From Scyliorhinus canicula (Eukaryota): a stretch of 64,000 nt of DNA. The stretch's first letter is position 1. Every line of letters starts with the position of its first letter. Below, piece after piece: positions 25,248 to 64,000 of this stretch. The stretch spans positions 20,518,546 through 20,582,545 of the forward strand of contig NC_052158.1 of NCBI RefSeq assembly GCF_902713615.1, written 5' to 3'. The notes under the pieces were generated by a model, which did no database searches, was not told the origin of the DNA, and worked only from the letters and a program-made list of their open reading frames with translations. A program made the translations under genes and the position numbers.

Positions 25248-26735
25248 CTATAAGATCCCCCCCATCCTTCTCAATTCCAATGAGTACAGTCCCAGTCTAC
25301 TCAACCTCTCCTCGTAATCCAACCCCTTCAGCTCTGGGATTAACCTAGTGAATCTCCTCTGCACACCCTCCAGCGCCAGTACGTCCTTTCTCAAGTAAGG
25401 AGACCAAAACTGAACACAATACTCCAGGTGTGGCCTCACTAACACCTTATACAATTGCAGCATAACCTCCCTAGTCTTAAACTCCATCCCTCTAGCAATG
25501 AAGGACAAAATTCCATTTGCCTTCTTAATCACCTGTTGCACCTGTAAACCAACTTTCTGCGACTCATGCACTAGCACACCCAGGTCTCTCTGCGCAGTGG
25601 CATGCTTTAATATTTTATCATTTAAATAATAATCCATTTTGCTGTTATTCCTACCAAAATGGATAACCTCACATTTGTCAACATTGTATTCCATCTGCCA
25701 GACCCTAGCCCATTCACTTAAACTGTCCAAATCCCTCTGCAGTCTTCCAGTATCTTCTGCACTTTTCGCTTTACCAATCATCTTAGTGTCATCTGCAAAC
25801 TTGGACACATTGCTCTTGGTCCCCAACTCCAAATCATCTATGTAAATTGTGAACAATTGTGGGCCCAACACTGATCCCTGAGGGACATCATGAGCTACTG
25901 ATTGCCAACCAGAGAAACACCCATTAATCCCCACTCTTTGCTTTCTATTAATTAACCAATCCTCTATCCATGCTACTACTTTACCCTTAATGCCATGCTT
26001 CTTTATCTTATGCAGCAACCTTTTGTGTGGCACCTTGTCAAAGGCTTTCTGGAAATCCTGATATACCACATCCATTGGTTCCCCGTTATCTACCGCACTG
26101 GTAATGTCCTCAAAAAATTCCACTCAATTAGTTAGGCACGACCTTCCCTTTATGAACCCATGCTGCGTCTGCCCAATGGGACAATTTCTATCCAGATGCC
26201 TCGCTATTTCTTCCTTGATGATAGATTCCAGCATCTTCCCTACTACTGAAGTTACGCTCACTGGCCTATAATTACCCGCTCTCTGCCTACCTCCTTTTTT
26301 AAACAGCGGTGTCACGTTTGCTAATTTCCAATCCGCCGGGACCACCCCAGAGTCTTGTGAATTTTGGTAAATTATAACTCGTGCATTTGAAATTTCCCTA
26401 GCCATCTCCTTTAGCACTCTGGGATGCATTCCATCAGGGCCAGGAGACTTGTCTACATTTAGCCCCGTTAGCTTGCCCATCACTACCTCCTTAGTGATAA
26501 CAATCCTCTCAAGGTCCTCACCTGTCATAGCCTCATTTCTATCAGTCGCTGGCATGTTATTTGTGTCTTCCACTGTGAAGACCGACCCAAAAAACCTGTT
26601 CAGTTCCTCAGCCATTTCCTCATCTCCCATTATTAAAACTCCCTTCACATCCTGACCAATATTTACCTTAGCCACTCTTTTTTGTTTTATATATTTGTAG
26701 AAACTTTTACTGTCTGTTTTTATATTCTGAGCAAG
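25248..26735 (-). pseudogene. CR1 ORF2 reverse transcriptase, one premature stop
   Basis: [40 protein letters not shown] motifs. Confidence 0.93.
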
Positions 26736-46869: not shown

Positions 46870-47829
46870 CATGAATGGGATATTCCATCTGAAAAGAGGA
46901 ACTGATGGCATTGTTGCCAAGTTTGCAGATGATGCAAAGATATGCAGAGTGACAGTTAGTGTTGAGGAAGTGGGTAGGCTGTAGAAGGGCCTGGACAGGC
47001 TAGGGGAATGGGCAAATAAGTGGCAGATGGAATACAACGTGGAGAAGTGTGTGATTATGCATTTTGGTGGGAAAAGAGAGGCATAGACTATTTTCTAAAT
47101 GGGAAAAGGCTTCATAAATCAGAAGCACAAATTGACTTAGAAGTCCTAATTCAATATTCTCTTAAGGTTAACATGCATGTTCAGTTGGCAGTTAGGAAGG
47201 CAATTGCAATGTTAGCATTCATGTTGAGATGGCTAGAATACAAGAGCAGGATGTACTGCTGAGGTTGTATAAGGCTCTGGTCAGACGCCATTTTTGAGCA
47301 GTTTGGGGCCCTATATCTAAGGAAGGATGTGCTGGACTTGGAGAGTGTCCAGAGGAGGTTCACAAGAATGATCCCTGGAATGAAGAACTTGTCGTATGAA
47401 CAGAGGTTGAGGACTCTGGGTCTGGACACAATGGAGTTTAGAAGGATGAGGGGGGATCTCATTAAAATTTACAGAATACTGAGAGGCCGAGATAGAGTGG
47501 ATGTGGAGAGGATCTTTCCACTAGTGGGAGAACCTGAGGCCACAGCATCAGACTGAAGGGACGATCCATTAAAGCAGAGATGAGGAGGAATTTCTTCAGC
47601 CAGAGGGTGGTGAATCTGTGGAACACTTTGCCGCAGAAGGCTGTGGAGGCCAATTCACTGAGTGTCTTTAAGACAGAGATAGATAGGTTCTTGATTACTA
47701 AGGGGATCAGGGGTTATGGGGAGAAGGCAGGAGAATGGCAATGAGAAACATATCAGCCATGATTGAATGGTGGAGCAGACTCGATGGGCTGAGTGGCCTA
47801 ATTCTGCTCCTATGCCTTATGGTCTTATG
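46870..47829 (+). mobile_element. CR1 LINE 3' end
   Basis: IVAKFADDAKIC; (CTTATG) tail. Confidence 0.9.
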
Positions 47830-49227
47830 AAACCACCCCACACCTCCGAGAAACCCACACATGGGGGCAGAAAAAAAGAGAAACCCAACGGCCGCTGTTG
47901 AAGCTTTTGGTCTTGCACTCATCGAGGGATTTTCAAACACCCATTGTAAAGAGAACAACAATTTATACTGCATGAGAAGAAAGTGCTGATTGAGTGCCAA
48001 CTGGACTCTGATTGGCAGAGGTATTGTACCAGGGGACAATACACTTTGTGATGTTGTGCGGAAGGCCAACATGGGATCTCAGACCTTGCAATCAAACCTT
48101 GAGTCAATCATGAGGGCAGGCGCGGGGGTTCTGTGAAGTGGGGCAACATTGGAAGAGGGATCTAAGAGAGGACAGAGTGTGGCTTCAGGGTTATGGAGGA
48201 GTAAAGTGGGAAGGGCCTGGTGTTCATGCTGCGGTTGGGCTGGTATGAAGATCAGGCAGCATCTGAACTGTCCAAATCTATGTCCATCCCATTTTATTGG
48301 TTGGCAGAGTCCTTACAGAGCACGGTGTTCACCAACAAATCTTCAATTACCTTCACTGAGATTGCTGTTGGACAATGTTCTCTACAATACATAGAAGGGA
48401 TGGTCAGCTAAGCCTGCAAGCTCAGCTATGTCCCACAGTGATGAGTACAACACTGGACACTGATATTAACATCTAATAAAGAATGAATGCAAAAACACAA
48501 CATTGTTTCTACCACAATGAAGGAATTCCCCTGTAACAATCCATGGGTACCAACGATGAAGCGTACCAGTATATTTTACTATGTGACTGAGCTGATCCCA
48601 GCCAATATCACACAGGAATAAAGTCATATCAATGGAATGTGAAATATTTGCAAGTGAAATTAAATTTCCAAAGCTTTGCCTTCTTGGGTCTTATGTAATT
48701 GCAATGGAGTGGGGCTGGAAAGTTGGGGCCCTGATGCAGAGCCTCCCTGTTTCACCAGGAGGCTCTTGAATAGGCCGCGTGTGGAAAAGCTACCCCAAGT
48801 GCTAAATCGAATCAGTTCAGTCTGTACATGGTCCATTACCCCCAGGAGTGTCTCTACTCTTATGGCGTACTCATAGTCTTATGGCGTTTGGGAATTTAAT
48901 TGTAACCGCGAGGGAAAGGACAAGAGAGAGATTGGAGGTGGTGCATGGCACTGTTTACTACACACATTATTGATAAAACCCAGCAGGCAGATTTCAGTCC
49001 ATGCTCGCTGTTGTTGGCATCGCAACTGCAGATTCTAACTCACCGTTAACACAGTGCCAGAGTCTGCGAAGTCAATTGGAAATTATTGCAGTTGTTGTTC
49101 ATACTTCCCCCAGTGGTGACACTGGGAAATACTAATTAGCGCTGAAAGAGCTGGTCATGCGATTCTTAAAAATCAACCTGTGCTTTTAATGTGTTTCTAC
49201 TGAAATGTTAATAATGCAAAGGAGTTG

Positions 49228-49455
49228 GGGCGGCACGGTGGCGCAGTGGGTTAGCCCTGCTGCCTCACGGCGCCGAGGTCCCAGGTTCAATCCTGGCACT
49301 GGGTCACTGTCCATGTGGAGTTTGCACATTCTCCCCGTGTCTGCGTAGGTTTCGCCCCCACAACCCAAAAATGTGCAGGCTTGGTGGATTGACCACGCTG
49401 AATTGCCACTTAATTGGAAAAAAAAATGAATTACTCTAAATTGATTTATTGTTTA
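49228..49455 (+). mobile_element. HE1-type SINE with ~18-bp TSD
   Basis: AATAATGC(A/G)AAGGAGTTG at 49210-49227 and 49456-49473. Confidence 0.92.
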
Positions 49456-49622
49456 AATAATGCGAAGGAGTTGAACGCTTTAAGACATGCATGGTCTGGA
49501 AATTCCTTGAGGCAAATTAAGAATAAACAAAGTCATGTTTGCATGGGGACGAAAACAGGTTTCGTATCGTCGCTCTTTGTAATAGTTTTGGAGTCAGCGC
49601 TGCTGATAAAATATAATCTAAC

Positions 49623-49979
49623 GGGGCTGGTTTAGCACAGTGGGCTTAACAGCTGGCTTGTAAGACAGAACAAGGCCAGCAGCGTGGGTTCAATTCCTGT
49701 ACCGACCTCCCCGAACAGGCGCTGGAATGTGGCGACTAGGGGCTTTTCACAGTAACTTCATTGAAGCCTACTTGTGACAATAAGTGATTATTATAAGGGG
49801 CTGGTTTAGCTCACTGGGCTAAATCGCTGCCTTTTAAAGCAGACGAAGCAGGCCAGCAGCACGGTTTGATTCCGTACCAGCCTCCCCGGACAGGGGCCGG
49901 AATGTGGCGACTAGGGGCTTTTCACAGTAACTTCATTGAAGCCTACTTGTGACAATAAGCGATTTTCATTTCATTTCAT
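49623..49979 (+). mobile_element. Two tandem short SINE family 2 copies
   Basis: GGGGCTGGTTTAGC heads at 49623 and 49797. Confidence 0.9.
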
Positions 49980-50232
49980 CTATATGTTCACATATTTCAG
50001 TTTATTCAGCCAGCTGGACCCTGTGGTTTGTGTTTTTTGCGAGCTGGGGTGGTAAAGATGATGTTAGATTAATCTGTGCATAACTGCAATTGTAGCACAT
50101 TTAACATAGTATTTTTCTTAATAAAACTATTCTAATCTGTCTGCTCACAACCACAGGCTGCGCTGTATCACGTATGATAAATAGGCCTCCATCTCATTCA
50201 GCTCCTTGTCCAGTTACTGTGATGTCAGAGAT

Positions 50233-50295
50233 ATGGGCAGAGAAATAAATCGCCTCTTCAAATCATCACCTTTTAACCTTTTGTTGATTACTTGA
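50233..50295 (+). pseudogene. Degenerate third leader exon of the Ig-receptor array
   Basis: MGREINRLFK vs MDRQTSRIFN / MDRETNGFVN; upstream CCACAGGCTGC and CCATCTCATT shared; early stop, no GTAAG donor. Confidence 0.55.
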
Positions 50296-50479
50296 TGTTC
50301 ATCTGAACAGAGTGGTTCTGAAACAGAGTAGCATCTGATCAGAGAGCTTAATTGGCAATTTGGAGATGGGGGAATTTGGAGACTCGGAATTTGTGGACAG
50401 TGGGAATTCAGAGAAAAGGGGGAAGGACATAATATATAAAATCAAAGATATCTAAGGCCGAGGAATATAGATAATAAGA

Positions 50480-50860
50480 GTTACGTTTGAGCTACTGGAG
50501 CTGATCTGCAAGGGATCAGCGGTGCGGAGCACTCCTGACACACAAGTGTGTCGTGGGTAAGTTGTTTACTTCATTTTAAAGCTACATTAAGATTTTGTTT
50601 AAAACTTTGATACATTTCTGCTGATCATAAATTGAACTGAAGTTATGGAAGATGAGCACATTCTTGTGTTGCGCCTCCTGTAGCATGTGGGAAATCGGAG
50701 ATGCTCCTTGCAATCTGGATGACCACGTGTGCGGGAAGTGCCACCGGTTTGACCAACATGAGCTCCGGGTTTCGGAGCTTGAGCATAGGCTGGAAGCACA
50801 GAGTGCATCCTGCGAGGCTGAGGTGAAACGTGGATAGCACATTTCTGGACGTTATCACCC
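50480..50860 (+). mobile_element. CR1 5' end with ORF1 zinc-finger/leucine-zipper fragment
   Basis: CASCSMWE...DDHVCGKC...ELRVSELEHRL. Confidence 0.75.
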
Positions 50861-52061
50861 CCCTAGCTCAAGGAAGTGCAGTCATGTATGTATATTAAAG
50901 CAGTCATGAAGACAGGGCTGGAGTAGGAAATACTGAATGACTGTGAGAAAGCAGGATTACTGTCTGTCTGTGAATGTTTTCACATTCTTGCCAACGCATT
51001 CCGAGACGGTTTTGATTTAAGTCCATGAATTCACCCCACGGACCGAAACCCTGCTGAGCTTTGGACATATTTCAGTTTAGGAGACAGGCGCTTTCCCTCC
51101 ACATTCTGCAGAAAGTCCATCAATTATTCTTCACTGCCACCCAGTGGTGTCACGGGGAAATACAGCGTTGCTCATGCGGCTGTTAGAATGACAAACACTC
51201 AATTAGTCCATGCTGATTCTACTGAAACATTACTAATGAGAAGGAGGTGATATAGATAAGACAGGGAGACTGGATAATCCATGAAACAGGCCAGTAATCA
51301 AAATGTCAAATGTGTAGAAGGGAAAAAGACACATTTCAAATCATCACTGTTATTTGTAATGGTTATTTCATTCAACACTGATGATTAAAAATGATAATAT
51401 CCAGACCTACAAAATCTAATTGTTACTGAAAAAATTAGAAAGTTTCAGCAGCGAAACTTTGTCAAAGGGAGGTTGTGTCTAACAAATCTGTTAGTGTTCT
51501 TTGAGGAGGTAACAGACAAGTTAGACAAAGGAGAATCAGATGTGATTTATTTAGATTTCCAGAAGGCCTTTGACAAGGTGCAGCATAGGAGACTGTTAAA
51601 TAAGGTAAAAAAGCCCATGGTGTTAAGGGTAAGATCCTGGCATGGATAGAGGATTAGCTGACTGGCAGAAGGCAGAGAGTTGGGATAAAGGGGTCTTTTT
51701 CAGGATGGCAGCCGGTGACTAGTGGTGTGCCTCAGGGGTCTGTGCTGGGACCACAACCTTTTACAATATACATTAATGATCTGGAAGAAGGAACTGAAGG
51801 CACTGTTGCTAAGTTTGCAGATGATACAAAGGTCTGTAGAGGGACAGGTAATATTGAGGAAGCAAGGGGGCTGCAGAAGGACTGGACAAGCTAGGAGAGT
51901 GGGCAATGAAGTGGCAAATTAAATACAATGTGGAAAAATGTGAGGTGATGCACTTTGGAAGGAGGAAACTAGGCACAGACTATTTACTAAATGGGGAAAT
52001 GCTTCAGAAAGCAGAAGCACAAAGGGACTTGGGGGTCCTTGTTCACGATTCTCTTAAGGTT

Positions 52062-52756
52062 TTTTTTTATAAATTTAGATTACCCAATTATCTTTTCCAA
52101 TTAAGGGGCAATTTAGCGTGGCCAATCCACCTACTCTGCACATTTTTGGGCTGTGGGGGCGAAACCCACGCAAACATGGGAGAATGTGCAAACTCCACAC
52201 GGANNNNNNNNNNNNNNNNNNNNNNNNNNNNNNNNNNNNNNNNNNNNNNNNNNNNNNNNNNNNNNNNNNNNNNNNNNNNNNNNNNNNNNNNNNNNNNNNN
52301 NNNNNNNNNNNNNNNNNNNNNNNNNNNNNNNNNNNNNNNNNNNNNNNNNNNNNNNNNNNNNNNNNNNNNNNNNNNNNNNNNNNNNNNNNNNNNNNNNNNN
52401 NNNNNNNNNNNNNNNNNNNNNNNNNNNNNNNNNNNNNNNNNNNNNNNNNNNNNNNNNNNNNNNNNNNNNNNNNNNNNNNNNNNNNNNNNNNNNNNNNNNN
52501 NNNNNNNNNNNNNNNNNNNNNNNNNNNNNNNNNNNNNNNNNNNNNNNNNNNNNNNNNNNNNNNNNNNNNNNNNNNNNNNNNNNNNNNNNNNNNNNNNNNN
52601 NNNNNNNNNNNNNNNNNNNNNNNNNNNNNNNNNNNNNNNNNNNNNNNNNNNNNNNNNNNNNNNNNNNNNNNNNNCAGTGACCCAGAGCCAGGATCGAACC
52701 TAGGACCTCAGTGCCGTGAGGCAGCTGTGCTAACCACTAGGCCACCATGCTGCCCT
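52062..52756 (-). mobile_element. HE1-type SINE with 15-bp TSD, containing an assembly gap
   Basis: GATTCTCTTAAGGTT at 52047-52061 and 52757-52771. Confidence 0.92.
52204..52674. other. Assembly gap (471 N)
   Basis: Run of N. Confidence 1.
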
Positions 52757-53783
52757 GATTCTCTTAAGGTTAATGTGCAGCTTCAGTCAGCAGTTAAGAA
52801 GGCAAATGCAATGTTAGCATTCATGTCAAGAGGGTGAGAATACAAGACCAGGGATGTACTTCTGAGGCTGTATAAGGCTCTGGTCAGACCCAATTTGGAG
52901 TATTATGAGCAGTTTTGGGCCCCATATCTAAGGAAGGATGTGCTGGCCTTGGAAAGGGTCCAGAGGAGGTTCACAAGAATGATCGCTGGAAAAAGAACTT
53001 GTTGTATGAGGAACGTTTGAGGACTCTGTGTCTGTACTCGTTGGAGTTTAGAAGGATGAGAGGGGATCTTATTGAAACTTACAGGATACTGTGAGGCCTG
53101 GCTGGAGTGGACATGGAGTGGATGTTTCCACTTGTCGGAAAAACCAGAACCAGAGGACACCATCTCAGACTAAAGGGACGATCCTTTAAAACTGAGATGT
53201 GGAACTCTGCCGCAGAAAGCTGTGGTGGTCAATTCACTGGGTGTCTTTAAGACAGAGATAGATAGGTTCTTGATTAATAAGGGAATCAGGAGTTATGGGG
53301 AGAAGGCAGGAGAATGGGGATGAGAAAATATCAGCCATGATTGAATGGCGGAGCAGATTCAATGGCCAAGTGGCCTGATTCTACTCCTATATCTTATGGT
53401 AAATGGTAAAATCGAATCGTTCAGCCTGTGGTTTGATATTTCTTTCTGAAGGGGGGCGGGAGTGATCCACAGTGAGCAATGAGGAAGTGGGGAGTGTGTT
53501 ATATTAATCTGCACATCTCGAACAAGATTGTATCAATTAAAGTTGATTTTTCTGTGATCTATAGGTTTTAAACATGTTGAATAGCCTGCACATAAATCAC
53601 ACAGTTAATCTGTCAAAGCTTGTTCCCTGGGTGAATTGCTGACAATCTCAGAGACACTTCTTGTCATTGGTCACTTCAGCTGCTGCCAGATCCCAGCCAC
53701 AGGCTGCTGCACTCAGTCACCTGGACACAGTGGCCCCATCTCATTGGCATCTTCTCGCTGTCTCCTTACTTTAATGTGGGGAG

Positions 53784-53859
53784 ATGGACAGACAAACCAG
53801 TCGCATATTTAACTTCACCAGCGGTTGCCTTTTCATCGGTTATTTTATTTCCATTTTCG
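53784..53859 (+). CDS. Ig-receptor copy 1 exon 1 (signal peptide, MDRQTSRIFNFTSGCLFIGYFISIF)
   Basis: ATG, hydrophobic core, phase-1 donor G|GTAAG; paralogue at 61091. Confidence 0.8.
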
Positions 53860-54853
53860 GTAAGTTCTTTGATTTTTGACAATGAAAGTAATTCTACGGT
53901 TAATCCCGCTTGATTCCTTGTCTATTTGCTGATAGTTTGCTCAGGGCGAGGGATCATTCACTCACTCAATCCAATGAGGGAAGTTAAACACCATAAAATC
54001 TGTGGTTGAATTCAGTGGGGCTCCTGTGAACAGGTAGAGCCCTTCAGTTAGTGTTCGGGAAAGACTTAACCCATCCTTAAACTGTCGCTGGGAGTTATTA
54101 ATAAATAAGCTCATCTACAAGAAACTTTAATGTATTAATTATTCATTATTAATTTTTATGTTCCAATTGTTATAACATGTATGGCAGTGTCAAATTGGAT
54201 GAATTGAACCTGTATCAAGTCTTTACTTAGTAATCACAACCATAAATTATAGCACATTAATAGAGCAGGGATAGAACACTGGGCTCAACTCCCTGCACAG
54301 AACTCTCAAGATTTAGCAAACCTCTATCATTAATCTTTCCTCAAATTCTTTTTCTCCAGGGAGAACGTTGCCACTTCTCCAATCAATCCCCTTAACTGAA
54401 GTTCCTCATCACTGAAAACAATCTCTCACAAATACTTCCACCCCTTTCCTAAAACGTACCGTCCAGAAAAGGACATAATTCTCGGTTAGCAGTATTTAAA
54501 ATAAGGTCCATCGGAACTTATTTGTTCTTGTGTTCAATTTATAGCTCCCGTATGATTTAACCGCTTTAGGCACGTCTAGATGGGGAGATGGGGAGACTCT
54601 GGTGCAGCACCTATCTAGAATTGTACCATTTTATTTCAAGCTGCCTCTTAGTCTTTCTGGCGGGCAGAATCATTTCACACTTTCCTGTGTTAGATTTCCC
54701 CGGGCTCAGCTCTGCCTATTTAACCATCCTGTCTATGTCGTCTTGATGATTCTCTCTGTGTTTCTCATAGTTCACCATCGTTTTCCATCTCATCTGCTAA
54801 TATTGAAATTATGTCCTGTACACCCAAGTCTTCATCATTAATATATTAATGAT

Positions 54854-55044
54854 GGGGCTGGTTTAGCTCACTCGGCTTAATCGCTGGCTTTTAAAGCAGA
54901 CCAAGCAGGCCAGCAGCACGGTTCGATTCCCGTACTCTCCCCGGACAGGCGCCGGAATGTGGCGACTAGGGGCTTTTCACAGTAACTTCATTGAAGCCTA
55001 CTCGTGACAATAAGTGATTTGCATTTTTTCATTTTTCACTTCAT
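54854..55044 (+). mobile_element. Short SINE family 2 (intronic)
   Basis: Family head and tail. Confidence 0.88.
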
Positions 55045-55396
55045 ATAACTGGAAAAAACAGTTGAAGATCAATGCTGAGGATCCCATGATATGATCTTCC
55101 TTCAGTCCAAAATACACCATCCACAATCCATCTCTCCTTCCTCACCCGGCCAATCTCTTTGCTGCTCCTGTCCCATTTATTCTGCAGGCTGGGATTTTAC
55201 TGACGAGTCTGAACTTTGTCAAAAGATTTGTTCAAATTGACGTAGAAGAAATCAATTATCAATTCTCTTTGTTACCTCCTCAAAAAATCCAAACCAGTTA
55301 GTCAGACGTGACCCTCCCTTCACAAAGAAAAGCAAAATACTGCAGATGGTAGAATTCGGAAATAAAACAGAAAGTACTGGAAATAAGAATGATCTT

Positions 55397-55680
55397 CAAT
55401 GTCACAAGTAGGCTTACATTAACACTGCAATGAAGTTACTAATAAAAGCCCCTCGTCGCCACATTCCGGCTCCTGTTCGGGTACACGGAGGGAGAATTCA
55501 GAGTGTCCAAATTACATAACAACACGTCTTTCAGGACTTGTGGGAGGAAACCGGAGCACCCGGAGGAAACCCACGCAGACACAGGGAGAACGTGCAGACT
55601 CCGCACAGACAGTGACGCAAGCCGGGAATCGAACCTGGAACCCTGGCACTGTGAAGCAACATTACTAACCACTGTGCAGT
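55397..55680 (-). mobile_element. HE1-head SINE with alternative tail (intronic)
   Basis: Reverse-complement core; TCACAAGTAGGCTTACATT tail. Confidence 0.88.
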
Positions 55681-55810
55681 CCTGACATTCACACTGTCCA
55701 GCAGATGTTTCTTTCCCAGTAAAATGTCTTCAGATGTTTTGTAATTTCAAAATTTGTAACTTTAAACTGTTCCTTTCCGAAGCTAATTCCTTTGTTCTGT
55801 GTTGTTGCAG

Positions 55811-56203
55811 CCTCGGGAATCGGGGTTACTGTGAGGGTCCATCAGAGAGAAGTGATGGGGACAGTGGACCAGTCTGTCCTTCTCCCTGTCTCCTATTCCA
55901 CACTCACACCCGGCTCCAATTTACAGATACAGTGGGGTTTATTCCCCGGAGACACTCCATTTGTGAGACTGGCCCGATCAAACTGCTCTCCAGACCCTGA
56001 CAGATCCGGTTATAACTGTTCAGATCACCGGGTGGCAGCTCCTTCCTACCGGGACCGAGTTCACCTCTACCCAGAGAATGGATCCTTGTTACTGTGGGAT
56101 TTACAGCCCAGTGACAGCGGGGTCTATGGGATATATGTTTATAGTGATGGTGGCAGCACAGGCTGGACAGGCAATGTGACTTTAACCGTCTATAACAAGA
56201 CAG
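55811..56203 (+). CDS. Ig-receptor copy 1 exon 2: V-type Ig domain, CD2/SLAM/CEACAM/HEPACAM/VSTM5-like
   Basis: TGCAG| acceptor and |GTAAG donor, 393 nt, phase 1-1; SVLLPVSY, IQW, RDRVHLYPENGSLLLWDLQPSDSGVY, VTLTV. Confidence 0.9.
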
Positions 56204-56363
56204 GTAAGAATTCACAATCTCTTTATCCAATTATTCCTCGGTGCGTTTTGCTAACATCGTAAGTTCTCACTGCAAACTGAATCAAACAATGATGATAAAG
56301 AATGATTGAGGTTATCCTTTCTATCCAATGGGCTTGTTGTAAGTGTCTGAATTCTTCTTCCAG

Positions 56364-56590
56364 ACACGGAGTCTCCCGCCCCGAGCAGCACCGAGCGAGC
56401 GGAGACCAGCAGAGAATTCCCAGCCCACCTAGCTCTCCTGCTCCGGGGGAGCATCTTTGGCGGAGTCACTGTGCTGGGGGCCTGTCTGTACTTGTGTGTG
56501 AGCCGGAGACACAGAGAGAGAACCGAGAGCGGGAGGACAGGACATAGACCCGCAGATGGAGATGTGCTGGGCAGGAACATGTTTGGATAA
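56364..56590 (+). CDS. Ig-receptor copy 1 exon 3: stalk, transmembrane segment, short tail (3' end assumes read-through to TAA)
   Basis: TTCTTCCAG| acceptor in frame; DTESPAPSST stalk; LALLLRGSIFGGVTVLGACLYLCV followed by SRRHRER stop-transfer. Confidence 0.8.
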
Positions 56591-58644
56591 TTTAATCCCA
56601 TACAAAATGGGATGTGCCCCGAATAACTTCCTTATAATGTTCAAATCAAATCCAAACAGTGCTGGGTCTGTTGTTCGCGATAATTTATACAGATAAACAG
56701 ACCAAGGTATAGGTTATGTTGTCTCTGCATTTTGCAACAACTATTTCCCCTCAATGTTTCAGATTCTGGAATATTTGGGAATAAACAGATCGGTCCGGAT
56801 TTGAAAAAGGAAATGAAGGGGATTAGGATTGACATCCTTATATTTCCAAATAAACTCCCTTAACTTCGACACAATCCCAAAGACATGGCTAAAACAATGA
56901 TCTTTGCTCTTCCTCCCGCGTTTCTGTCCGCCCAGCATTGGGGCAGAATGGGAGAACAACGGCCCCACCTCGCCCCAGGACATTATTCCCCGGCATACAC
57001 TCAGTGAAATCCCTCTGCAGAATTCCAGACTACTCTTCCAGCAGGCCTCAGCTCAGTGTCAACATTATTTACCACAAAATACGCTGCATTCGTAAAATAT
57101 CTGAAAGAACATTGTAGACATTTCAAAATGGCCATCAAGCAAAGTGCAATAATATTCAGGTTCTCTACATACATCATGCTGCACACTGAGGAGCCTCAAT
57201 ACATTCAAAGAAACATAACAGACATTTCAAAACACTCATTACAAACGGTGCAGAAGTATTTCGGTTTTCTGCGTAGATCAAGTTCCACCCTGAGATGCTT
57301 CAATATTACTGTGATACATGGAGTATTCGCTGTGTGCATTCAATGTGATTCGTACAACGTGAGGGGATTCTCTATAATTTCACTCCCTCCAGTTCACTGT
57401 GGCTGAAATGTATTTGACATCACAGATAGACATCTTGTCCTGTCTCTGCATACTACAGCTGGCATTTGCCTTTCGTTCAGTCACCTCTCACTGTGATTTT
57501 CCCGCCTGTGCGGAATCCAAAGAATTCCAAAGAAGGGTCCTTCTCCCGACCGCCAGTTACTGCAGCATAAACCATTCACAGTTCATTTACCACAGCGAGT
57601 GTTAGTTGATGCACTGACCTGCCGATTGTGGTGGTTACTTGTACCTTCTGCAAGGGAACTTCAAACCAAGGAAGAACATTTTATTATCTGACGGGAAATG
57701 TGCTGAGCAAAATTATCCCAAGGTTGATATAAATCCAAGATTTCGGATTTAAATCCGGCACAGTTGGAGGACAGGGAGACACGGAAATAATACTTTAATG
57801 TGTGTGAACGGGAAGGATTGGGATTTATACCGTTAACAGTCGCAGAATGTTCAAAGTCTCTCACAGGCAATAAGGAACATTTAAAATGCAGTCATCATTG
57901 TAATGTCCGGAAATGCAGCACCCAGCAAGATTCCAGATCCAAGTATCAGATAAATGGTCAAACTGTTCATGGCGATGCAAGTTGAGGAATAAATGTAGAT
58001 CTAATGCACAGAAATATACCCGGAGATCTTGCTATTAGGGTGGGGTGGGGGGTAAGTGTACAATTCAAACAACTCGAAATCCTGTAATCACTTCCTTACA
58101 ATGTGTAAATCAAACTCGCAAAATATTGGACCTGTTATTGGGGAGAATTTCTACAGGTACCAACCCGAACATTTAGTCCGCGCTAGCAACAGGGAAAGAC
58201 AAATAGCTTGAATTCCCATGGGATTCCCTCCAAACCACTTCCTGATTCCAGCATAATATCCGCAGAGCTCCATGGTTTACAGCAATGATTTGTGATGATT
58301 CTCCAGGGAAACCTCTGATCTTGCCTCGACGTTGGTTCGTGATAATCCCCAGGCCCCCACTCCCAAAGGGAATCTCCCTTCCAGGAAACTCCTCTTCCAG
58401 GTGAACCTTTTGCGTAAAATTAATGATCTAAAATGAAAACTCGAATTCATGATCCAATCTTAGTGTAGCCACGGCGATAGCTCCTCTGGGGACAGCTGGG
58501 ATTTGAATCCATATCTTCAGCACAGTCCAGTTGGGATTGAAGTGGAAACTGGGGTTAGAATGTAAACCAGTAAGATTCAATGTTCAGAGGTCACAGATCA
58601 GTCCTGAGCTGGCGGACTGCAGCCAGGTTTGATCACAAGGACAT

Positions 58645-58830
58645 GGACAGTCAAATGATGTGCGGGTTAGGTGGATTGGCCATGCTAAATTGTCCCTTAG
58701 TGTCCAGGGATGTGCAGGTACTCTTACGGGGATAGGGTGGGGAGTGGACCAGAGTGGGATGCTCTTTCGGAGGGTCTGTGCAGACTCGATGGGCCGAATG
58801 GCCTCCTTGTGCACAGTAGATTCTATGACA
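58645..58830 (+). mobile_element. 5'-truncated HE1-type SINE
   Basis: GATGTGCGGGTTAGGTGGATTGGCC core and tail. Confidence 0.85.
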
Positions 58831-60292
58831 TAAAGAGTATTCCAGGTTGGTGCTGGGCCTTGGGTTTATAGACAATGGCTAATGGAGCACCTATCAAAAG
58901 GTCAGATTTGACTGTACTTCTGTCATATTAAATGGTCACTGTTTTGGAATGTAATTTATATACTTCATGCTCAAACTATATTTTGGGGAAAGTGGCGGTG
59001 TTCCCAGGAGCACGTGTTTGGAGCAGCTGCTGGAGATGCAATCGGCAAAATCATCCAGCTATAAAACACCGAGGGGCTGGGAAAGTGTGGCCACCCTCTA
59101 TCACCCCCCCCCCCCCCCCCCCCCCCGCCCCACCACCCCCATCCCCGTGTATGTGCCGGATATGGAATTGACATTGTGAACAGCACCATTTGTGAAACTG
59201 TGTTGAGACGTCCCGGGCAGGAAAATGCTTCACGGAGAGAGGGTGAATCCTATCGCACTTCCTGTAATTCTCAATTTGAAATGTTTTCTCCTCGGGCTGT
59301 TTATTTGACAGGGAATGTCCATTGTCCAAAATCTCAGGATTACTGAAATTGTATTGAGGCCCCTCCCAGCGGATGTGCTGGATGGAGAAAAGTTACATTT
59401 CATTGCACATTCTGTAATGTTCAATTTTAAAAATGTTTTTCAATGTACTTATACAAATATTACGAATAAAGTATATTTTTTGGCGGGAAAGACGTCCAAG
59501 TCAGGATTTTATTTATTCAGGGACTTTTTTAATTCATTTTTTCCATGGCGGTGGGTTTCGCTGGCTATTCCCAGGTATCTGCTGCTTTTGTCCTCACCCA
59601 AGCAGTGTGGGGAAAGCAGGATTAACGTCAGTGCAATGGGGGTGGGTGGATGCAGACTGAGTTACAGTGTGTTAGAGCAGCGGTTATGTTATTACAGGAC
59701 AGTAAGAAAGGGGCTGGGGTAGGAGTTACTGCGTTACAATGTGAGAGAGCAGGATTCATGTCGGTCCACACACGGTTTTCACTCCAATCGCTTCAGAAAT
59801 ATACAATCTGTCCCTCACTCTGCCACCTAGTGGTGTCACTCAGAAATGCTGCACAACAATTTGTTACAATTACAAACATTAATTGAAATTGGGTGCACTG
59901 AAATGTACTTCGAGTTTCTTTCCAACGGAATATTCACAATGAGGTTAAAAACTTGACGATGTGGATCACCCAGGGCGCCGGGAATTTCCAAGGAGCAGGG
60001 CAGGAATACAATTGTCGAGTTTGTAATCTGGATGGAAACATTTTGCCCTCAGCATTGTTCTTGGTTTAGTTTGGGAGTCGCTGCTGCTGATAAAATATAC
60101 ACCTGAGATCTGCAGTAAAACCTATAGTTACTGATAAAATGAGATGGTGTCAGCAGCGAATCGAATGGTGCAGCTGGAGCAGCGGTTCAGCCTGTGGTCT
60201 GATGTTTTTTTTTGAGGGGGGGGGGGTGTGAGCCACAGTGGGGGAGGGGCGGTATTGAATTGATCTGTGCACCCAGCACATCCTCAAAAGTA

Positions 60293-60658
60293 GAACATAG
60301 ATTTACATAGAATTTACAGTGCAGAAGGAGGCCATTCGGCCCATCGAATCTGCACCGTCTCTTGGAAAGAGCACCCTACCCCCTACCCAAGGTCAACACC
60401 TCCACCCTATCCCCATAACCCAGTAACCCCACCCAACACTAAGGGCAATTTTGGACACTGAGGGCAATTTATCATGGCCAATCCACCTAGCCCGCACATC
60501 TTTGGACTGTGGGAGGAAACCGGAGCACCCGGAGGAAACCCACGCACACACGGGGAGGATGTGCAGACTCCGCACAGACAGTGACCCAAGCCGGAATCGA
60601 ACCTGGGACCCTGGAGCTGTGAAGCGATTGTGCTATCCACAATGCTACCGTGCTGCCC
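60293..60658 (-). mobile_element. HE1-type V-SINE, followed by a CR1 3' end to ~60840
   Basis: Reverse-complement head, core and tail. Confidence 0.9.
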
Positions 60659-61090
60659 AGTACAGTACAGCACAGAGCAGGCCCTTCAGCCCTCCATGTT
60701 GTGCCGAGAATTGTCGGAAACCAAGATCAAGCTATCCCACTCCCTGTCATTCTGGTGTGCTCCATGTGCCTATCCAATAACCGCTTGAAAGTTCCTAAAG
60801 TGTCCGACTCCACTATCACAGCAGGCAGTTCATTCCACACTCAAAGTTACTTTCATTCTGAGCAATTTAGTTTAAACCGGTTTTTTTAACGTGTGCCTTC
60901 AAATTGTGGAGTTAATCTGTCAAAACTTGTTCCCTGGGTGAATTGCTGACAATCTCAGAGACAGTTGTTGGCGTTGGTCACTTCCACTGCTGCCAGCTCC
61001 CAGCCACAGGCTGCTGCACCCAGTCACCTGGACACAGTGGCCCCATCTCATTGGCATCTTCTCGCTGTCTCCTTACTTTGATGTGGGGAG

Positions 61091-61166
61091 ATGGACAGAG
61101 AAACCAATGGCTTCGTCAACTTCACCAGCGGGTGCCTTTTGATCTGCTACTTTATTTCCATTTTCG
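61091..61166 (+). pseudogene. Ig-receptor copy 2 exon 1 (signal peptide, MDRETNGFVNFTSGCLLICYFISIF)
   Basis: 76 nt, phase-1 GTAAG donor, same as copy 1. Confidence 0.8.
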
Positions 61167-61690
61167 GTAAGTTCTTACATTTGTTTCACTGTGAAGGTAT
61201 TTCTGCAGCTAGTTTCAGTTAACTCTGTGTGGCTGACGGTGTTTACTGGAGCTGGGGTTAATCACCCTCCCGGGCCAGTGAGTGAAGCTAATCACAGTTC
61301 ATTAGATCTTCAATTTCATTCAGTGTGAGTCCTGGGAACAGATACAGTCTCCCGTCACACCCTGTGCTCCAGTTAATGTTCCGCAAAGAGCTAAAGGATC
61401 TTTTAGCGGTAGATGGTAAATAGGGTTTTCTTCCAGAGATTTTAATTTGATTTTAATTCGACAATTACTAATTATTAAAACCCTCAATTGTCGCATTTTC
61501 TGTTTTTGTTTCAGATTCCAGTATCCACAGTAATTTGCCTTTTTTTTAAATTTTGGGATGAATTCGATTTTTAAAAACTAAATGATTACAATTCAGAGAT
61601 AGGCCGCTTGGGTCAACCAGTCTAAACATTTCGCTCGTCACAAACCTCTCCCCCAGTCTTTTCAATCCAGCTCTCCATCACCATACCCAT

Positions 61691-61908
61691 TGATGTACTG
61701 TCAATTACCGCGAGACGACAATGGTGACACAATGGAGGCTTTATTGCACAAGATATTGTGCCTCCTGCAGCTGGAACAGCACAGGAGAACATACACCTTT
61801 ATACGCCGCCTGCTGGGAGGAGCCAGCAGACTGGGATTTACTGTGGTACCTGTAATACAGTAGCAGGACCGTAATACATGCAATGTGTTACTAGTGGTGT
61901 TTACCACA
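61691..61908 (-). mobile_element. Solo LTR, 218 bp, 5-bp TSD CCCAT
   Basis: TG...CA termini; CCCAT at 61686-61690 and 61909-61913; related to the 36663 LTR. Confidence 0.88.
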
Positions 61909-62747
61909 CCCATTTGTTCCTTTCTGCTCGTACTGCGGGTTCCATTAATTGGCAGCTCACGTCCCAACTGCCCCAAGTCACAGTCCCACCACTCTCTGCA
62001 TAAACACCGAGTTTTCCTGGGAATTTCTCAGAGACCATTGATTGGTAATGAGTTAAATACACTTCTAAAGATCTGAAATGCACAGCCTGAAAAGAAGATG
62101 GCAGATATGACAGTAACTCCCCGAAGAAGAATTGGATATAAAATTGATCTAGAAACAGAACTATAGGATAGTGAGGGAGAGAGAGACAGAGAGAATGAGA
62201 GAGCAGAATAAAACATCAGCAGACAAAGCAGATAAAGAGAACAAGTTAAGGCACGATGCACAAAATGGCGCCATTCTCTTCTATATGAATCTGTTATTCG
62301 ACAACTATATCTTGTTGTATTTGACTGTTGTGTCGCTTCTTTCCAATGTACAAGTTAGTTATAGTCTAACTATAGACCTTCTCTTAACAATCCCCTGCTG
62401 ACTGCTCCGGATCAACCCTTCTCTTTCTAAATAACCACTCGTTCTGCCCCCAGATTTTATTTTTCGTTACATTAATTCCCTAAGGAAGTCATTCCAAACA
62501 TTAACTCTGTTTTTCTCTCCACAGACGTTGCCAGATGCTGAGCTTTTCCAGCATTTTCTCTTTTCATTTCAGAATTCCGGCATCCGCTGTATTTAACTTC
62601 GGAATTTTTGTTCACGCTCTTGGTGTTTTGGGATTTCTAACCAATGGGATGTCTTGTGGCGGCCTCTCTGTGTGAAAGCATTGATCGGAATTTGGAGCTG
62701 GTTTTATCCTTCCCAGAGCGATTTTGTGCATTGTTTCTGTGTTGCAG

Positions 62748-63305
62748 CCTCGGGAATCGGTGTTACTGTGAGGGTCCATCAGAGAGAAGTGATGGGGACA
62801 GTGGACCAGTCCGTCCTTCTCCCTGTCTCCTATTCCACACTCACACCCGGCTCCACTTTACGGATACAGTGGGGTTTATTCCCCGGAGACTCTCCATTTG
62901 TGAGACTGACCCGATCAAACTGCTCCCCAGACCCTGACAGATCCGGTTATAACTGTTCAGATCATAAGACCATAAGACCATAAGACATAGGAGTGGAAGT
63001 AAGGCCATTCGGCCCATCGAGTCCACTCCACCATTCAATCATGGTTGATTTCAACTCCATTTACCCGCTCTCTCCCCATAGCCCTTAATTCCTCGAGAAA
63101 TCAAGAATTTTCGAGAAATCAAGAAATCACCGACAGACAGCTCCTTCCTACCGGGACCGAGTTCACCTCTACCCAGAGAATGGATCCTTGTTACTGTGGG
63201 ATTTACAGCCCAGTGACAGCGGGGTCTATGCGATATCTGTTTATAGTGATGGTGGGAACACAGCCTGGAGAGGCAATGTGACTTTAACCGTGTATAACAA
63301 GACAG
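62748..63305 (+). pseudogene. Ig-receptor copy 2 V exon disrupted by a CR1 insertion
   Basis: Near-identical to copy 1 exon plus 165 nt; stop at 62981-62983. Confidence 0.9.
62965..63125 (-). mobile_element. Short CR1 3'-end insertion, TSD ATCA
   Basis: (CATAAGAC)n tail, GGCCATTCGGCCCATCGAG; ATCA at 62961-62964 and 63126-63129. Confidence 0.88.
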
Positions 63306-63456
63306 GTAAGAATTCACAATCTCTTTATCCAATTATTCCTCGGTGCGTTTTGCTAATAGCGGTTTTTTTTAACTGCGGTGGCCTTGTCGTTTGGAAACAA
63401 ACTGAGTAATTAGTTATTGTTTTCCGAAGTTGTTGCAATTATCATTCTTCTTCCAG

Positions 63457-63635
63457 ACACGGAGTCTCCCGCCCCGAGCAGCACCGAGCGAGCGGAGACC
63501 AGCAGAGAATTCCCAGCCCACCGAGCCGCTCTCCTGCTCCGGGGGAGCATCTTTGGCGGAGTGACTGTGCTGGGGGCCTGTCTGTACTTGTGTGTGAGCC
63601 GGAGATACAGAGAGAGAACCGAGGACAGGACATAG
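63457..63635 (+). pseudogene. Ig-receptor copy 2 stalk/TM exon with 8-nt deletion and early stop
   Basis: AALLLRGSIFGGVTVLGACLYLCVSRRYRERTEDRT*; lacks AGCGGGAG relative to copy 1. Confidence 0.85.
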
Positions 63636-64000
63636 ACCCGCAGGTGGAGATGTGCAGGGCAGGAACATGTTGCACAATTCAAACGATTGGCAATCCCACT
63701 GGAACCGTAATAACTTCCTTCCAATATTCAGATCAACTCAACATCACAGGACATGGAATCTGGCATTTCTCCAGATATCTAACCTCTTGAATCGAGTATA
63801 ATTTGTCTCCATTTTACATTATTTATTCGCATTTGTTATTTCAAGGTGACTCGTGTAGATCTGGGGAACCTCCGCGCCCCTCCCCCAACAAAATTCACCC
63901 TCAGTAATATCCTCCCTCTGAGTGCTACCATTTACTAAGGTGCAACCTGACATCCATACAGCCTGATCTCAGACAGCAATAGCCCCTCTTGGCCCAGTCC

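What the first reader, a model, noticed from the sequence alone, without database searches (positions are those of the whole stretch)
49020..63720. Tandem array of uncharacterised single-V-domain Ig receptors in birth-and-death evolution
Seen: three homologous units - ~49.0-50.3 kb (upstream block plus leader relic), ~50.9-56.6 kb (apparently intact leader-V-TM gene) and ~59.7-63.7 kb (disrupted gene). Homology includes non-coding upstream blocks. The V domain has CD2/SLAM/CEACAM/HEPACAM/VSTM5-type hallmarks, but I cannot assign an orthologue. Inference: a lineage-expanded cartilaginous-fish receptor family, possibly immune.
Basis: partly seen in the sequence, partly recalled or inferred. Interest (0 to 1): 0.7.

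Follow-up and report, generated by a model that had tools for sequence, protein, structure and literature searches.

The report
Shark activating-type V-set receptor gene array
This stretch of a catshark chromosome holds one intact gene, one broken copy and one small remnant of an unnamed cell-surface receptor family. The copies here look like the "activating" twins of an inhibitory receptor gene annotated elsewhere on the same chromosome, which is a familiar design in immune receptors but undescribed for this family.

Summary
Unit B (50.9-56.8 kb) holds an intact three-exon gene of 231 aa: leader 53784-53859, V-set exon 55811-56203, and stalk/TM/short-tail exon 56364-56590. Unit C (59.7-63.7 kb) is the same gene, killed by a 161-bp LINE-tail insertion in its V exon. 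Unit A is only two short colinear remnants (49583-49615 and 50137-50261).

The N gap (52204-52674) lies inside a SINE nested in a LINE, 1.1 kb upstream of the leader exon. It touches no exon or reading frame.

The family is not shark-only and not unannotated. Relatives occur in sharks, rays, birds and turtles, mostly as "uncharacterized LOC" proteins. The nearest named folds are HEPACAM and VSTM5, at 25-31% identity.

My reading is that B and C are the activating arm of a paired receptor family:
- They carry an Arg in the TM and a short tail without tyrosine. This exon type is shared with bamboo and epaulette sharks (43% identity, E 4e-9).
- Same-species inhibitory paralogues (LOC119975690, ITIM plus ITSM-like tail) have 90-95% identical V domains.
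- Exons are about 95% identical between B and C while their introns cannot be aligned, which points to gene conversion on top of birth-and-death.

RNA reads show the V-to-TM splice. They carry paralogue letters, so B's own expression is unproven. This is a new member of a known kind, of moderate interest. An earlier scan note reports another Arg-TM unit 6.4 kb beyond the window.

The parts
49583..49615 (+). Unit A: small remnant of the upstream block
   Evidence: 88% over 33 nt to 60067-60099, E 4e-6
50137..50261 (+). Unit A: promoter/leader-exon relic. The ATG is kept, but there is a stop after 20 codons and the donor is lost.
   Evidence: 69.6% to 60990-61119, E 1e-5; three-way alignment
50887..51455 (+). 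Unit B: distal upstream homology blocks (50887-50968, 51134-51161, 51411-51455)
   Evidence: 75-86% to 59685-60160 of unit C
51464..53400 (+). LINE (reverse-transcriptase) fragment private to unit B. It splits the upstream block and holds a nested antisense SINE (52062-52757) with the N gap 52204-52674.
   Evidence: Homology to the RVT_1-bearing copy 25248-26151 and to 47000-47829; 14-bp TSD; gap flanks abut in other SINE copies
53603..53783 (+). Gene B: conserved promoter/5'UTR block
   Evidence: 94.5% to 60910-61090
53784..53859 (+). Gene B exon 1: signal-peptide leader, 25 codons plus 1 nt, donor GT at 53860
   Evidence: Sequence; spliced translation. Same length and junction as the leader of P0026, with 11 of 25 residues identical by eye.
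55811..56203 (+). Gene B exon 2: V-set domain (phase 1/1), with no canonical B/F cysteines and an extra C58-C69 pair
   Evidence: Pfam V-set 1.5e-8; AF2 pLDDT 89; AG/GT borders
56364..56590 (+). Gene B exon 3: stalk, TM helix with Arg (LALLLRGSIFGGVTVLGACLYLCV), 25-aa tail without Tyr, TAA stop
   Evidence: The 56203>56364 GT..AG joint is seen in 7 RNA reads and 1 contig. 43% identity, E 4e-9, to the C. punctatum Arg-TM form.
56591..56800 (+). Gene B probable 3'UTR, with AATAAA at 56780
   Evidence: Read depth continues to about 56.8 kb; poly(A) signals
59685..60240 (+). Unit C: upstream homology blocks
60290..60680 (+). SINE-type repeat private to unit C, between the upstream block and the promoter
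   Evidence: Many dispersed copies in the window
60910..61166 (+). Gene C promoter block and intact leader exon (61091-61166, donor GT at 61167)
62748..63305 (+). Gene C V exon, split by an insertion
   Evidence: 96.7% and 93.9% to the V exon of B
62965..63125 (-). 161-bp 5'-truncated LINE 3' tail inserted antisense in the V exon of C. It brings in-frame stops and has a short ATCA duplication at its borders.
   Evidence: 74-77% to the LINE ends 47688-47829 and 53267-53400; alignment; tblastn stops
63457..63635 (+). Gene C exon 3: stalk/TM with Arg and a 13-aa tail (VSRRYRERTEDRT, stop TAG). It has 8 nt fewer than B in the tail.

Best explanation
The region is part of a tandem cluster of an unnamed vertebrate Ig-superfamily receptor family. 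Its members have one HEPACAM/VSTM5-like V domain, a stalk and a TM.

The three units here are of the activating type:
- Gene B is intact in the assembly.
- Gene C is a pseudogene.
- Unit A is a leader relic.

Proposed mechanism (inferred):
1. The V domain binds the same, still unknown, ligand as the inhibitory paralogue LOC119975690.
2. That paralogue's tail carries an ITIM (LTYSML) and an ITSM-like motif (TIYAFA), which would recruit SH2 phosphatases.
3. B lacks any tyrosine motif. It carries an arginine in the outer third of its TM helix, which would pair with the aspartate of an ITAM adaptor (FcR-gamma or DAP12 type) and so signal activation.
4. Copies are gained and lost by tandem duplication and TE hits (birth-and-death). 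Gene conversion keeps the V, TM and promoter tracts of activating and inhibitory copies nearly identical within a species.

Shown: gene structure, lesions, homologies, the V-to-TM splice in family transcripts, and the conservation of the Arg-TM exon across two shark orders.

Inferred: adaptor pairing, ligand sharing, immune-cell expression, and the function of B itself.
For: Gene model with consensus splice sites and a 231-aa ORF. Pfam V-set 1.5e-8. Confident V-fold model, pLDDT 89.

Inhibitory partner: same-chromosome paralogues P0001/P0002 (LOC119975690) carry ITIM and ITSM-like tails. Their V domains are 90-91% identical to B's and 93-95% to C's.

Conserved activating exon:
- B's exon 3 is 85% identical to the stalk/TM of S. 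canicula LOC119976513.
- It is 43% identical (E 4e-9) to the Arg-TM, 12-13-aa-tail forms of Chiloscyllium punctatum and Hemiscyllium ocellatum, including LL(L/V)R and VSRR-x-RE.
- It is unrelated to the same-species inhibitory TM exon (E 0.15).

V domains cluster by species, not by type. C. punctatum A vs I is 98%, Hemiscyllium 92%.

B vs C identity: promoter 94.5%, V exon 94-97%, TM exon 96%, dS 0.065. Intron 1, mid-intron 2 and the 3' flank cannot be aligned, and the distal upstream blocks are only 75-86%.

Stranded oligo-dT RNA reads cover only the V and TM exons and the 3'UTR, all in one orientation. Seven reads from seven starts span the predicted 56203>56364 intron.

Sequence differences among the catshark paralogues concentrate in the C/C' strands, the F strand and the FG loop.
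Against: - B's own expression is not shown. At the B-private letters 55919, 55972, 55989, 56035 and 56168, every read of the raw-read run X22 carries the paralogue letter. No read lies on B's leader exon.
- The only hint for B itself is one run of unknown kind that holds 43% of the exact words of its tail/3'UTR.
- No protein identical to B was returned by the database searches, so it may be unannotated or regarded as non-coding.
- dN/dS between B and C is 0.65 from only 18 differences, which is uninformative.
- The Arg could sit at the membrane edge instead of in the helix.
- No adaptor, ligand or tissue data were obtained.
- The exhaustive profile search found the Arg-TM exon only in two cluster representatives, catshark and epaulette shark. 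Its conservation therefore rests on two shark orders.
Confidence: 0.68

Rival explanations
1. All three units are dead or dying by-products of cluster turnover. B is intact only because it is a young or recently converted copy, and it is not expressed. The working family members lie elsewhere (LOC119975690, LOC119976513).
For: No read carries B-private letters and none lies on B's leader exon. No identical annotated protein was returned. The neighbours are a pseudogene and a relic. B has an 8-nt insertion that lengthens its tail compared with C and with the bamboo/epaulette-shark forms.
Against: B has a complete ORF, consensus splice sites, a conserved promoter block (94.5%) and a poly(A) signal. 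One run holds 43% of B's exact 3' words. Only about a third of one raw-read RNA run, of unknown tissue, was examined.
Confidence: 0.22
2. The V exons are alternative 5' cassettes, in the manner of clustered protocadherins or UGT1A. Each has its own promoter and leader, and each is spliced over long distances onto one shared downstream TM/ITIM constant region.
For: The RefSeq gene LOC119975690 spans about 131 kb. Its isoforms X2 and X3 carry different V exons joined to the same tail.
Against: B and C each have their own TM exon and stop directly after the V exon. Reads join V to that TM exon. No ITIM-tail exon lies in the window. LOC119976513 is a separate 13.5-kb gene. The 131-kb model may be a merger of neighbouring genes.
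Confidence: 0.06
3. It is a non-immune adhesion or accessory molecule like HEPACAM or VSTM5. The TM Arg and the paralogues' tyrosine motifs would then have no immunoreceptor meaning.
For: The nearest named folds are HEPACAM (31% identity) and VSTM5 (25%), both chiefly neural or epithelial adhesion-type proteins. No tissue data were obtained.
Against: The family shows an ITIM plus ITSM-like pair in the tails of sharks, rays, birds and turtles. It also shows an activating/inhibitory dichotomy with homogenised ectodomains, copy-number turnover and pseudogenes. These are typical of leukocyte receptor clusters and not of conserved single-copy adhesion genes.
Confidence: 0.08

Closest known systems
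Paired activating/inhibitory Ig receptors (SIRP alpha/beta, KIR2DL/2DS, PILR, Siglec-11/16, LILRB/LILRA)
   Same: The ectodomains of the ITIM-tailed and short-tailed forms are nearly identical. The short-tailed form has a basic residue in its TM. Ectodomain exons are homogenised by gene conversion. The genes sit in tandem clusters with pseudogenes.
   Different: The domain type is different: a single HEPACAM/VSTM5-like V domain without the canonical disulfide. There is no sequence relationship to those families beyond the Ig fold. The adaptor and the ligand are unknown.
HEPACAM / HEPACAM2
   Same: Best structural and sequence match of the V domain (E 3e-9, 27-31% identity). Some homologues are auto-named HEPACAM-like.
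   Different: HEPACAM proteins have a V plus a C2 domain and a long cytoplasmic tail. Here there is one V domain only, a short tail, and an extra C58-C69 pair that is invariant in this family.
VSTM5
   Same: Same architecture of leader, one V domain, TM and a short tail. TM-score 0.71-0.75.
   Different: Only 24-25% identity. The Atlas VSTM5 clusters carry a VSTM5_C family. Pfam found nothing in B's exon 3, though I could not confirm that this model is in the library copy used. VSTM5 is not known to me as a multi-copy paired family; this is from my own knowledge and was not tested.
CEACAM / SLAM-CD2 N-domains
   Same: V domain without the B/F disulfide, an NGSLL...D-x-G-x-Y motif, and ITIM/ITSM-type tails in the paralogues. 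There are marginal phmmer hits to CEACAM N-domains (E 0.02-0.5). The Atlas neighbours include clusters with 2B4-type V domains.
   Different: No membrane-proximal C2 domain. These families are not among the top 30 structural matches. The similarity is below significance.
S. canicula LOC119976513 and LOC119975690; Hemiscyllium LOC132832679; Chiloscyllium punctatum homologue
   Same: True family members. LOC119976513 shares the Arg-TM exon with B at 85%. LOC119975690 is the ITIM-tailed partner. The bamboo and epaulette shark proteins are the orthologous activating type.
   Different: B differs from each by about 10% in the V domain and has a private 8-nt insertion that lengthens its tail. The RefSeq model of LOC119976513 leaves the TM exon at an internal donor (TGT|GTGAGC) and runs into an odd 80-aa end.

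Membership tests
Immunoglobulin V-set domain (Pfam PF07686) | Profile match above the gathering score, and a V-type beta-sandwich fold | tested here: met
   35.2 bits against a cut-off of 26, E 1.5e-8. The AF2 model has pLDDT 89 and a V-type strand pattern. More than 500 V-domain structures match.
Immunoglobulin V-set domain (Pfam PF07686) | Canonical B-strand and F-strand cysteine pair | tested here: not met
   B has Val at the B-strand site (LLPVSY) and Ile/Tyr at the F-strand site (GVYGIYV). W41 and R82...D101 are kept, and C58 and C69 are invariant. This is the same condition as in CD2/SLAM/CEACAM-type V domains.
Paired activating/inhibitory immunoreceptors | Two forms with near-identical ectodomains within one species | tested here: met
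   V-domain identity is 90-95% in Scyliorhinus, 98% in C. punctatum and 92% in Hemiscyllium. The forms cluster by species in the tree.
Paired activating/inhibitory immunoreceptors | Inhibitory form with ITIM/ITSM in its tail | tested here: met
   LTYS(M/L)L plus TIYAFA in sharks; TIYARI plus VVYTSI or TEYASI in birds and turtles. These are sequence motifs only.
Paired activating/inhibitory immunoreceptors | Activating form with a charged TM residue and a short tail without motifs | tested here: met
   Arg lies in LALLLRGSIF... followed by 18 hydrophobic residues. The tail is 25 aa in B and 13 aa in C, without Tyr. The feature is conserved in P0078 and P0082.
Paired activating/inhibitory immunoreceptors | Association of the activating form with an ITAM adaptor, and opposite signalling of the two forms | not testable with these tools
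This needs co-expression and mutagenesis.
Paired activating/inhibitory immunoreceptors | Expression on leukocytes | not tested
   The RNA runs are coded and their tissue is unknown. Only expression of the family as such is shown.
HEPACAM family | V domain followed by a C2 domain, and a long cytoplasmic tail | tested here: not met
   The V exon is spliced directly to the stalk/TM exon. tblastn and Pfam find no second Ig exon in units B or C.
HEPACAM family | V-domain sequence and structure similarity | tested here: inconclusive
   HEPACAM is the best named match, but at only 27-31% identity.
VSTM5 | Single V domain plus TM plus the VSTM5-specific C-terminal region | tested here: inconclusive
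   The architecture matches and the TM-score is 0.71-0.75 at 24-25% identity. Exon 3 matches no Pfam family, but I could not confirm that the VSTM5_C model is in the library copy used.
CEACAM / SLAM-CD2 | N-terminal disulfide-less V domain followed by C2 domain(s) | tested here: not met
   There is no C2 exon. Only marginal sequence hits to CEACAM N-domains were found (E 0.02 or weaker).

The most novel reading that the evidence does not exclude
An ancient single-V paired receptor system, HEPACAM/VSTM5-like, with an ITIM/ITSM arm and an Arg-TM arm. It would be retained in elasmobranchs and, with a different short-tail form, in birds and turtles. Its V exons would be continually homogenised between the activating and inhibitory genes. 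In the catshark it may be organised partly as a 131-kb multi-V-cassette locus that feeds one inhibitory tail. If true, it would be an undescribed leukocyte-receptor-type cluster, predating the shark/bony-vertebrate split, that was not seen in mammals or teleosts among the top hits.
Probability: 0.25. Interest if true: 0.65.

Novelty: new member of a known kind. Interest (0 to 1): 0.45.

Why it matters
Paired activating/inhibitory receptors are central to innate immune recognition in mammals, but they are poorly charted in cartilaginous fish. This locus gives a compact, testable example:
- The Arg-TM exon is older than the split between catsharks and bamboo sharks.
- The V exons are kept alike by conversion.
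- Visible gene turnover is present.
- Relatives exist in birds and turtles that nobody has named.

The locus could help date the origin of adaptor-coupled receptor pairs. It also points to an unknown ligand system. Against that, the family is already present in public annotation as uncharacterised genes, and the design principle is well known.

Tried and rejected
- tblastn of the ITIM-tailed paralogues against the window found no tail exons anywhere in the 64 kb. B and C are therefore not truncated views of inhibitory genes.
- tblastn for further V exons in 1-47 kb found none. That part of the window is TE-rich, with RVT_1 ORFs.
- BLASTP of the 25-aa leader against P0026 gave no alignment because the query is too short. 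The comparison was made by eye.
- The look-up of encoding contigs returned no DNA for LOC119975690 or LOC119976513. The position of the window relative to those genes is therefore unknown.
- The exhaustive profile search with the Arg-TM exon found only the two known clusters plus low-complexity noise such as P0122.
- Three literature searches found no paper on this family.
- Reads: the single read-laying run covered B only (53400-59399). C and the B leader splice could not be tested further.
- The second run search gave only shares of words.
- A haplotype or assembly duplicate was rejected. B and C sit 7.1 kb apart on one contig and have unalignable introns and private TEs.
- The N gap was not filled or looked up.

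Full report
**Observation**

Self-comparison of the window confirms two colinear homologous units. Unit B runs from 50887 to about 56650. Unit C runs from 59685 to about 63740. Their shared pieces are:
- three short distal upstream blocks (75-86% identity);
- a promoter-plus-leader block, 53603-53895 against 60910-61204 (89.5%);
- the V exon (55803-56027 against 62740-62964 at 96.9%, then 56024 onwards against 63126 onwards);
- the stalk/TM exon.

Two colinear pieces match unit C: 49583-49615 (88%, E 4e-6) and 50137-50261 (69.6%, E 1e-5). The second piece aligns with the promoter and leader. It keeps an ATG but runs into a stop after 20 codons and has lost the donor. The rest of 49.0-50.0 kb is SINE copies. 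No V or TM relic follows.

**The gap**

The N run 52204-52674 lies in an antisense SINE (52062-52757). That SINE is bounded by a 14-bp target duplication (ATTCTCTTAAGGTT, families D9 and D12). It sits inside a LINE reverse-transcriptase fragment (51464-53400), which in turn splits B's upstream block.

The two gap flanks align to directly adjacent positions of three other SINE copies (49309|49310, 15335|15336, 9858|9859). No SINE sequence is therefore missing, and the true gap is probably very short. The gap is 1.1 kb upstream of the start codon and outside every exon, so continuity of a reading frame is not an issue. The long ORFs listed across it are artefacts.

**Gene models**

Gene B has three coding exons, and all its borders are AG/GT:
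- Leader exon 53784-53859: 25 codons plus one base, donor GT at 53860.
- V exon 55811-56203, phase 1 at both ends.
- Exon 3, 56364-56590.

Exon 3 encodes a Ser/Thr/Pro-rich stalk and a hydrophobic segment, LALLLRGSIFGGVTVLGACLYLCV, which contains an arginine. It then encodes a 25-residue basic tail without tyrosine and a TAA stop. AATAAA signals lie at 56780 and 56849. The product is 231 aa.

Gene C has an intact leader (61091-61166) and an exon 3 that ends in a 13-residue tail (63457-63635). Its V exon is interrupted after 62964 by 161 bp. The insert is the 5'-truncated 3' tail of the same LINE family seen at 47.0-47.8 and 51.5-53.4 kb, lying antisense and bringing in-frame stops. This is the only clearly disabling lesion. 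The 8-nt difference in the tail makes C, not B, resemble the 12-13-residue tails of other sharks.

**Family**

The V exon matches Pfam V-set (E 1.5e-8). With a 40-sequence alignment it folds confidently (pLDDT 89). It lacks the canonical B/F cysteines and keeps W41 and the R82/D101 pair. It also has an invariant extra pair, C58/C69, which face each other across the 49-60/67-75 hairpin of the model.

Database searches returned 178 relatives. The best 120 come from sharks, rays, birds and turtles. Almost all are "uncharacterized protein LOC...". A few are automatically named HEPACAM-like, HEPACAM2-like or CEACAM3-like.

The closest hits are Scyliorhinus canicula proteins, all on one 163-Mb chromosome:
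- LOC119975690 isoforms X3 and X2, 87% and 84% identical to the read-through V-exon ORF used as the query.
- LOC119976513.

Earlier scan notes name this genome as the small-spotted catshark. The near-identity to these proteins fits that, but I did not verify it independently.

Structure searches put HEPACAM (30-31% identity, E 3e-9), VSTM5 (24-25%) and HEPACAM2 (27-28%) first. Solved structures give generic V domains such as TIGIT, PD-L1, Nav beta-4 and VCBP3. CEACAM N-domains appear only as marginal sequence hits. No orthologue with a curated name emerged, and three literature searches found nothing on the family.

**Activating and inhibitory forms**

The inhibitory forms are the annotated shark and ray proteins with a long tail. 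They carry an ITIM (LTYS-x-L) and an ITSM-like TIYAFA. The bird and turtle proteins carry TIYARI plus VVYTSI or TEYASI.

The window holds no such tail exon. Instead:
- B's exon 3 is 85% identical to the stalk/TM of LOC119976513.
- It is 43% identical (E 4e-9) to the C-terminal part of two short proteins, from Chiloscyllium punctatum and Hemiscyllium ocellatum. These share the LL(L/V)R arginine, the ...LGA-x-LY... core and a VSRR-x-RE tail that stops after 12-13 residues.
- It shows no meaningful similarity to the TM exon of the same-species inhibitory gene (E 0.15).

An exhaustive profile search found this exon type only in those two lineages' clusters.

The V domains behave in the opposite way. 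In a maximum-likelihood tree they cluster by species, not by type. Activating-type and inhibitory V domains are 98% identical in C. punctatum, 92% in Hemiscyllium and 90-95% in Scyliorhinus. Between the two shark orders they are only 62-71% identical.

This is the classical signature of paired receptors. The membrane and tail exons form two old lineages, and the ligand-binding exon is homogenised between them.

**Conversion on top of birth-and-death**

Identity between B and C:

| Segment | Identity |
|---|---|
| Promoter/5'UTR | 94.5% |
| V exon | 96.7% and 93.9% |
| TM exon | 96% |
| Distal upstream blocks | 75-86% |
| Intron 1, middle of intron 2, 3' flank | no detectable homology (58-67% in forced alignments) |

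Synonymous divergence in the V exon is only 0.065 (6 synonymous and 12 non-synonymous differences, ratio 0.65). Protein-level selection cannot hold synonymous sites so far below intron divergence. Exon-centred gene conversion on an older duplication is the simplest account.

Private TE insertions, a pseudogene and a relic show turnover as well.

Differences among the six Scyliorhinus V domains cluster in the C/C' strands, the F strand and the FG loop. This sheet is the usual binding face of CD2/CEACAM-type domains; that last point rests on my own knowledge.

**Expression**

One call of read laying was available (53400-59399).
- In a stranded oligo-dT RNA run, reads outside repeats lie only on the V exon (depth 7-9), on exon 3 (about 6) and on the sequence up to about 56.8 kb.
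- All of these reads have one orientation, as expected for transcription of the + strand with an antisense-reading library.
- Seven reads with seven different starts, plus one contig from another run, skip exactly 56204-56363 (GT..AG). The predicted V-to-TM splice is therefore real in transcripts of this subfamily.
- However, at the positions where B differs from its paralogues (55919, 55972, 55989, 56035, 56168), every read of that raw-read run carries the other letter. Reads over 56430 carry the 3-nt insertion seen in C and LOC119976513. No read lies on B's leader exon.

The reads therefore come from close paralogues that lack C's insertion. B's own transcription is not shown. The only hint is a run of unknown kind that holds 43% of the exact 31-letter words of B's tail and 3'UTR.

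**Mechanism**

The proposed mechanism is inferred. The arginine is followed by 18 hydrophobic residues and a basic stop-transfer stretch. From my own knowledge, untested here, this geometry is like that of the receptors that pair with FcR-gamma, such as GPVI, OSCAR, Fc-alpha-RI and LILRA.

I propose that B-type proteins recruit an ITAM adaptor and activate the cell. LOC119975690-type proteins would recruit SH2 phosphatases through their ITIM and ITSM-like motifs. Both would see the same ligand through near-identical V domains. The adaptor, the ligand and the cell type are all untested.

**Rivals**
- The units here may all be non-functional by-products of cluster turnover (about 0.2). This fits the lack of B-specific reads. 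It does not fit B's intact ORF, splice sites, conserved promoter and poly(A) signal.
- A protocadherin-like cassette arrangement is suggested by the 131-kb RefSeq model, whose isoforms use different V exons with one tail. For B and C it is contradicted by their own TM exon and stop, and by the observed V-to-TM joint.
- A non-immune adhesion role like that of HEPACAM or VSTM5 cannot be excluded without tissue data. It fits poorly with the tyrosine motifs, the two-form design and the copy turnover.

**Verdict**

This is a real and correctly located finding, with an over-stated third unit. It is an unnamed but already annotated vertebrate receptor family. The copies here are best read as the activating arm of a paired system. 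That makes it a new member of a known kind, of moderate interest.

An earlier scan note (s1-270801) reports a further Arg-TM single-V unit 6.4 kb beyond the window's end. I did not test it, but it fits an array that continues downstream.

Noticed in passing
outside the window (S. canicula LOC119975690): The RefSeq gene model spans about 131 kb. Its isoforms X2 and X3 carry different V exons joined to the same ITIM/ITSM tail, and X3 skips the TM exon. It is either a multi-V-cassette gene or a merger of neighbouring genes.
   Followed up: partly
P0026 (S. canicula LOC119976513), compared with window 56495-56510: The RefSeq model leaves the TM exon at an internal TGT|GTGAGC donor, which is also present in B and C. 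It continues into an odd 80-aa C-terminus. In the bamboo and epaulette sharks the exon reads through to a stop after VSRR-x-RE.... This is a possible mis-model or a real alternative splice.
   Followed up: partly
Bird homologues P0015, P0016, P0074, P0076, P0089, P0091, P0099 and others: Birds have ITSM/ITIM-tailed forms and also short-tailed forms. The short-tailed forms have a distinctive polar TM (...CYCFILLLLQLLFHL..., sometimes with Arg), which may be an independent activating-type arm.
   Followed up: no
window 54854-55032, 55384-55677, 58647-58828: SINE-type repeats with extremely high depth in every RNA run laid (summed contig depth of 1e5 or more). They produce many chimeric or opposite-strand joints such as 55539-58650, so joints at these places are repeat artefacts.
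   Followed up: partly
window 59092-59148: A G/C-rich homopolymer-like tract, read as poly-Pro or poly-Gly in ORFs. The reads tool skipped it as a repeat.
   Followed up: no
window 47000-47829 and 51891-53400: Two copies of one LINE 3' region, about 80% identical. A 5'-truncated tail of the same family is the insertion that killed gene C, so the family was active after the B/C duplication.
   Followed up: partly
Atlas neighbours of the V domain: The top language-model neighbour cluster carries the Pfam family Ig_VSIG10L2_N. VSIG10L2 was not examined as a possible relative.
   Followed up: no
Ray homologues P0020 and P0085: Rays have family members with two or three tandem V domains of this type. 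The single-V architecture is therefore not universal in the family.
   Followed up: no
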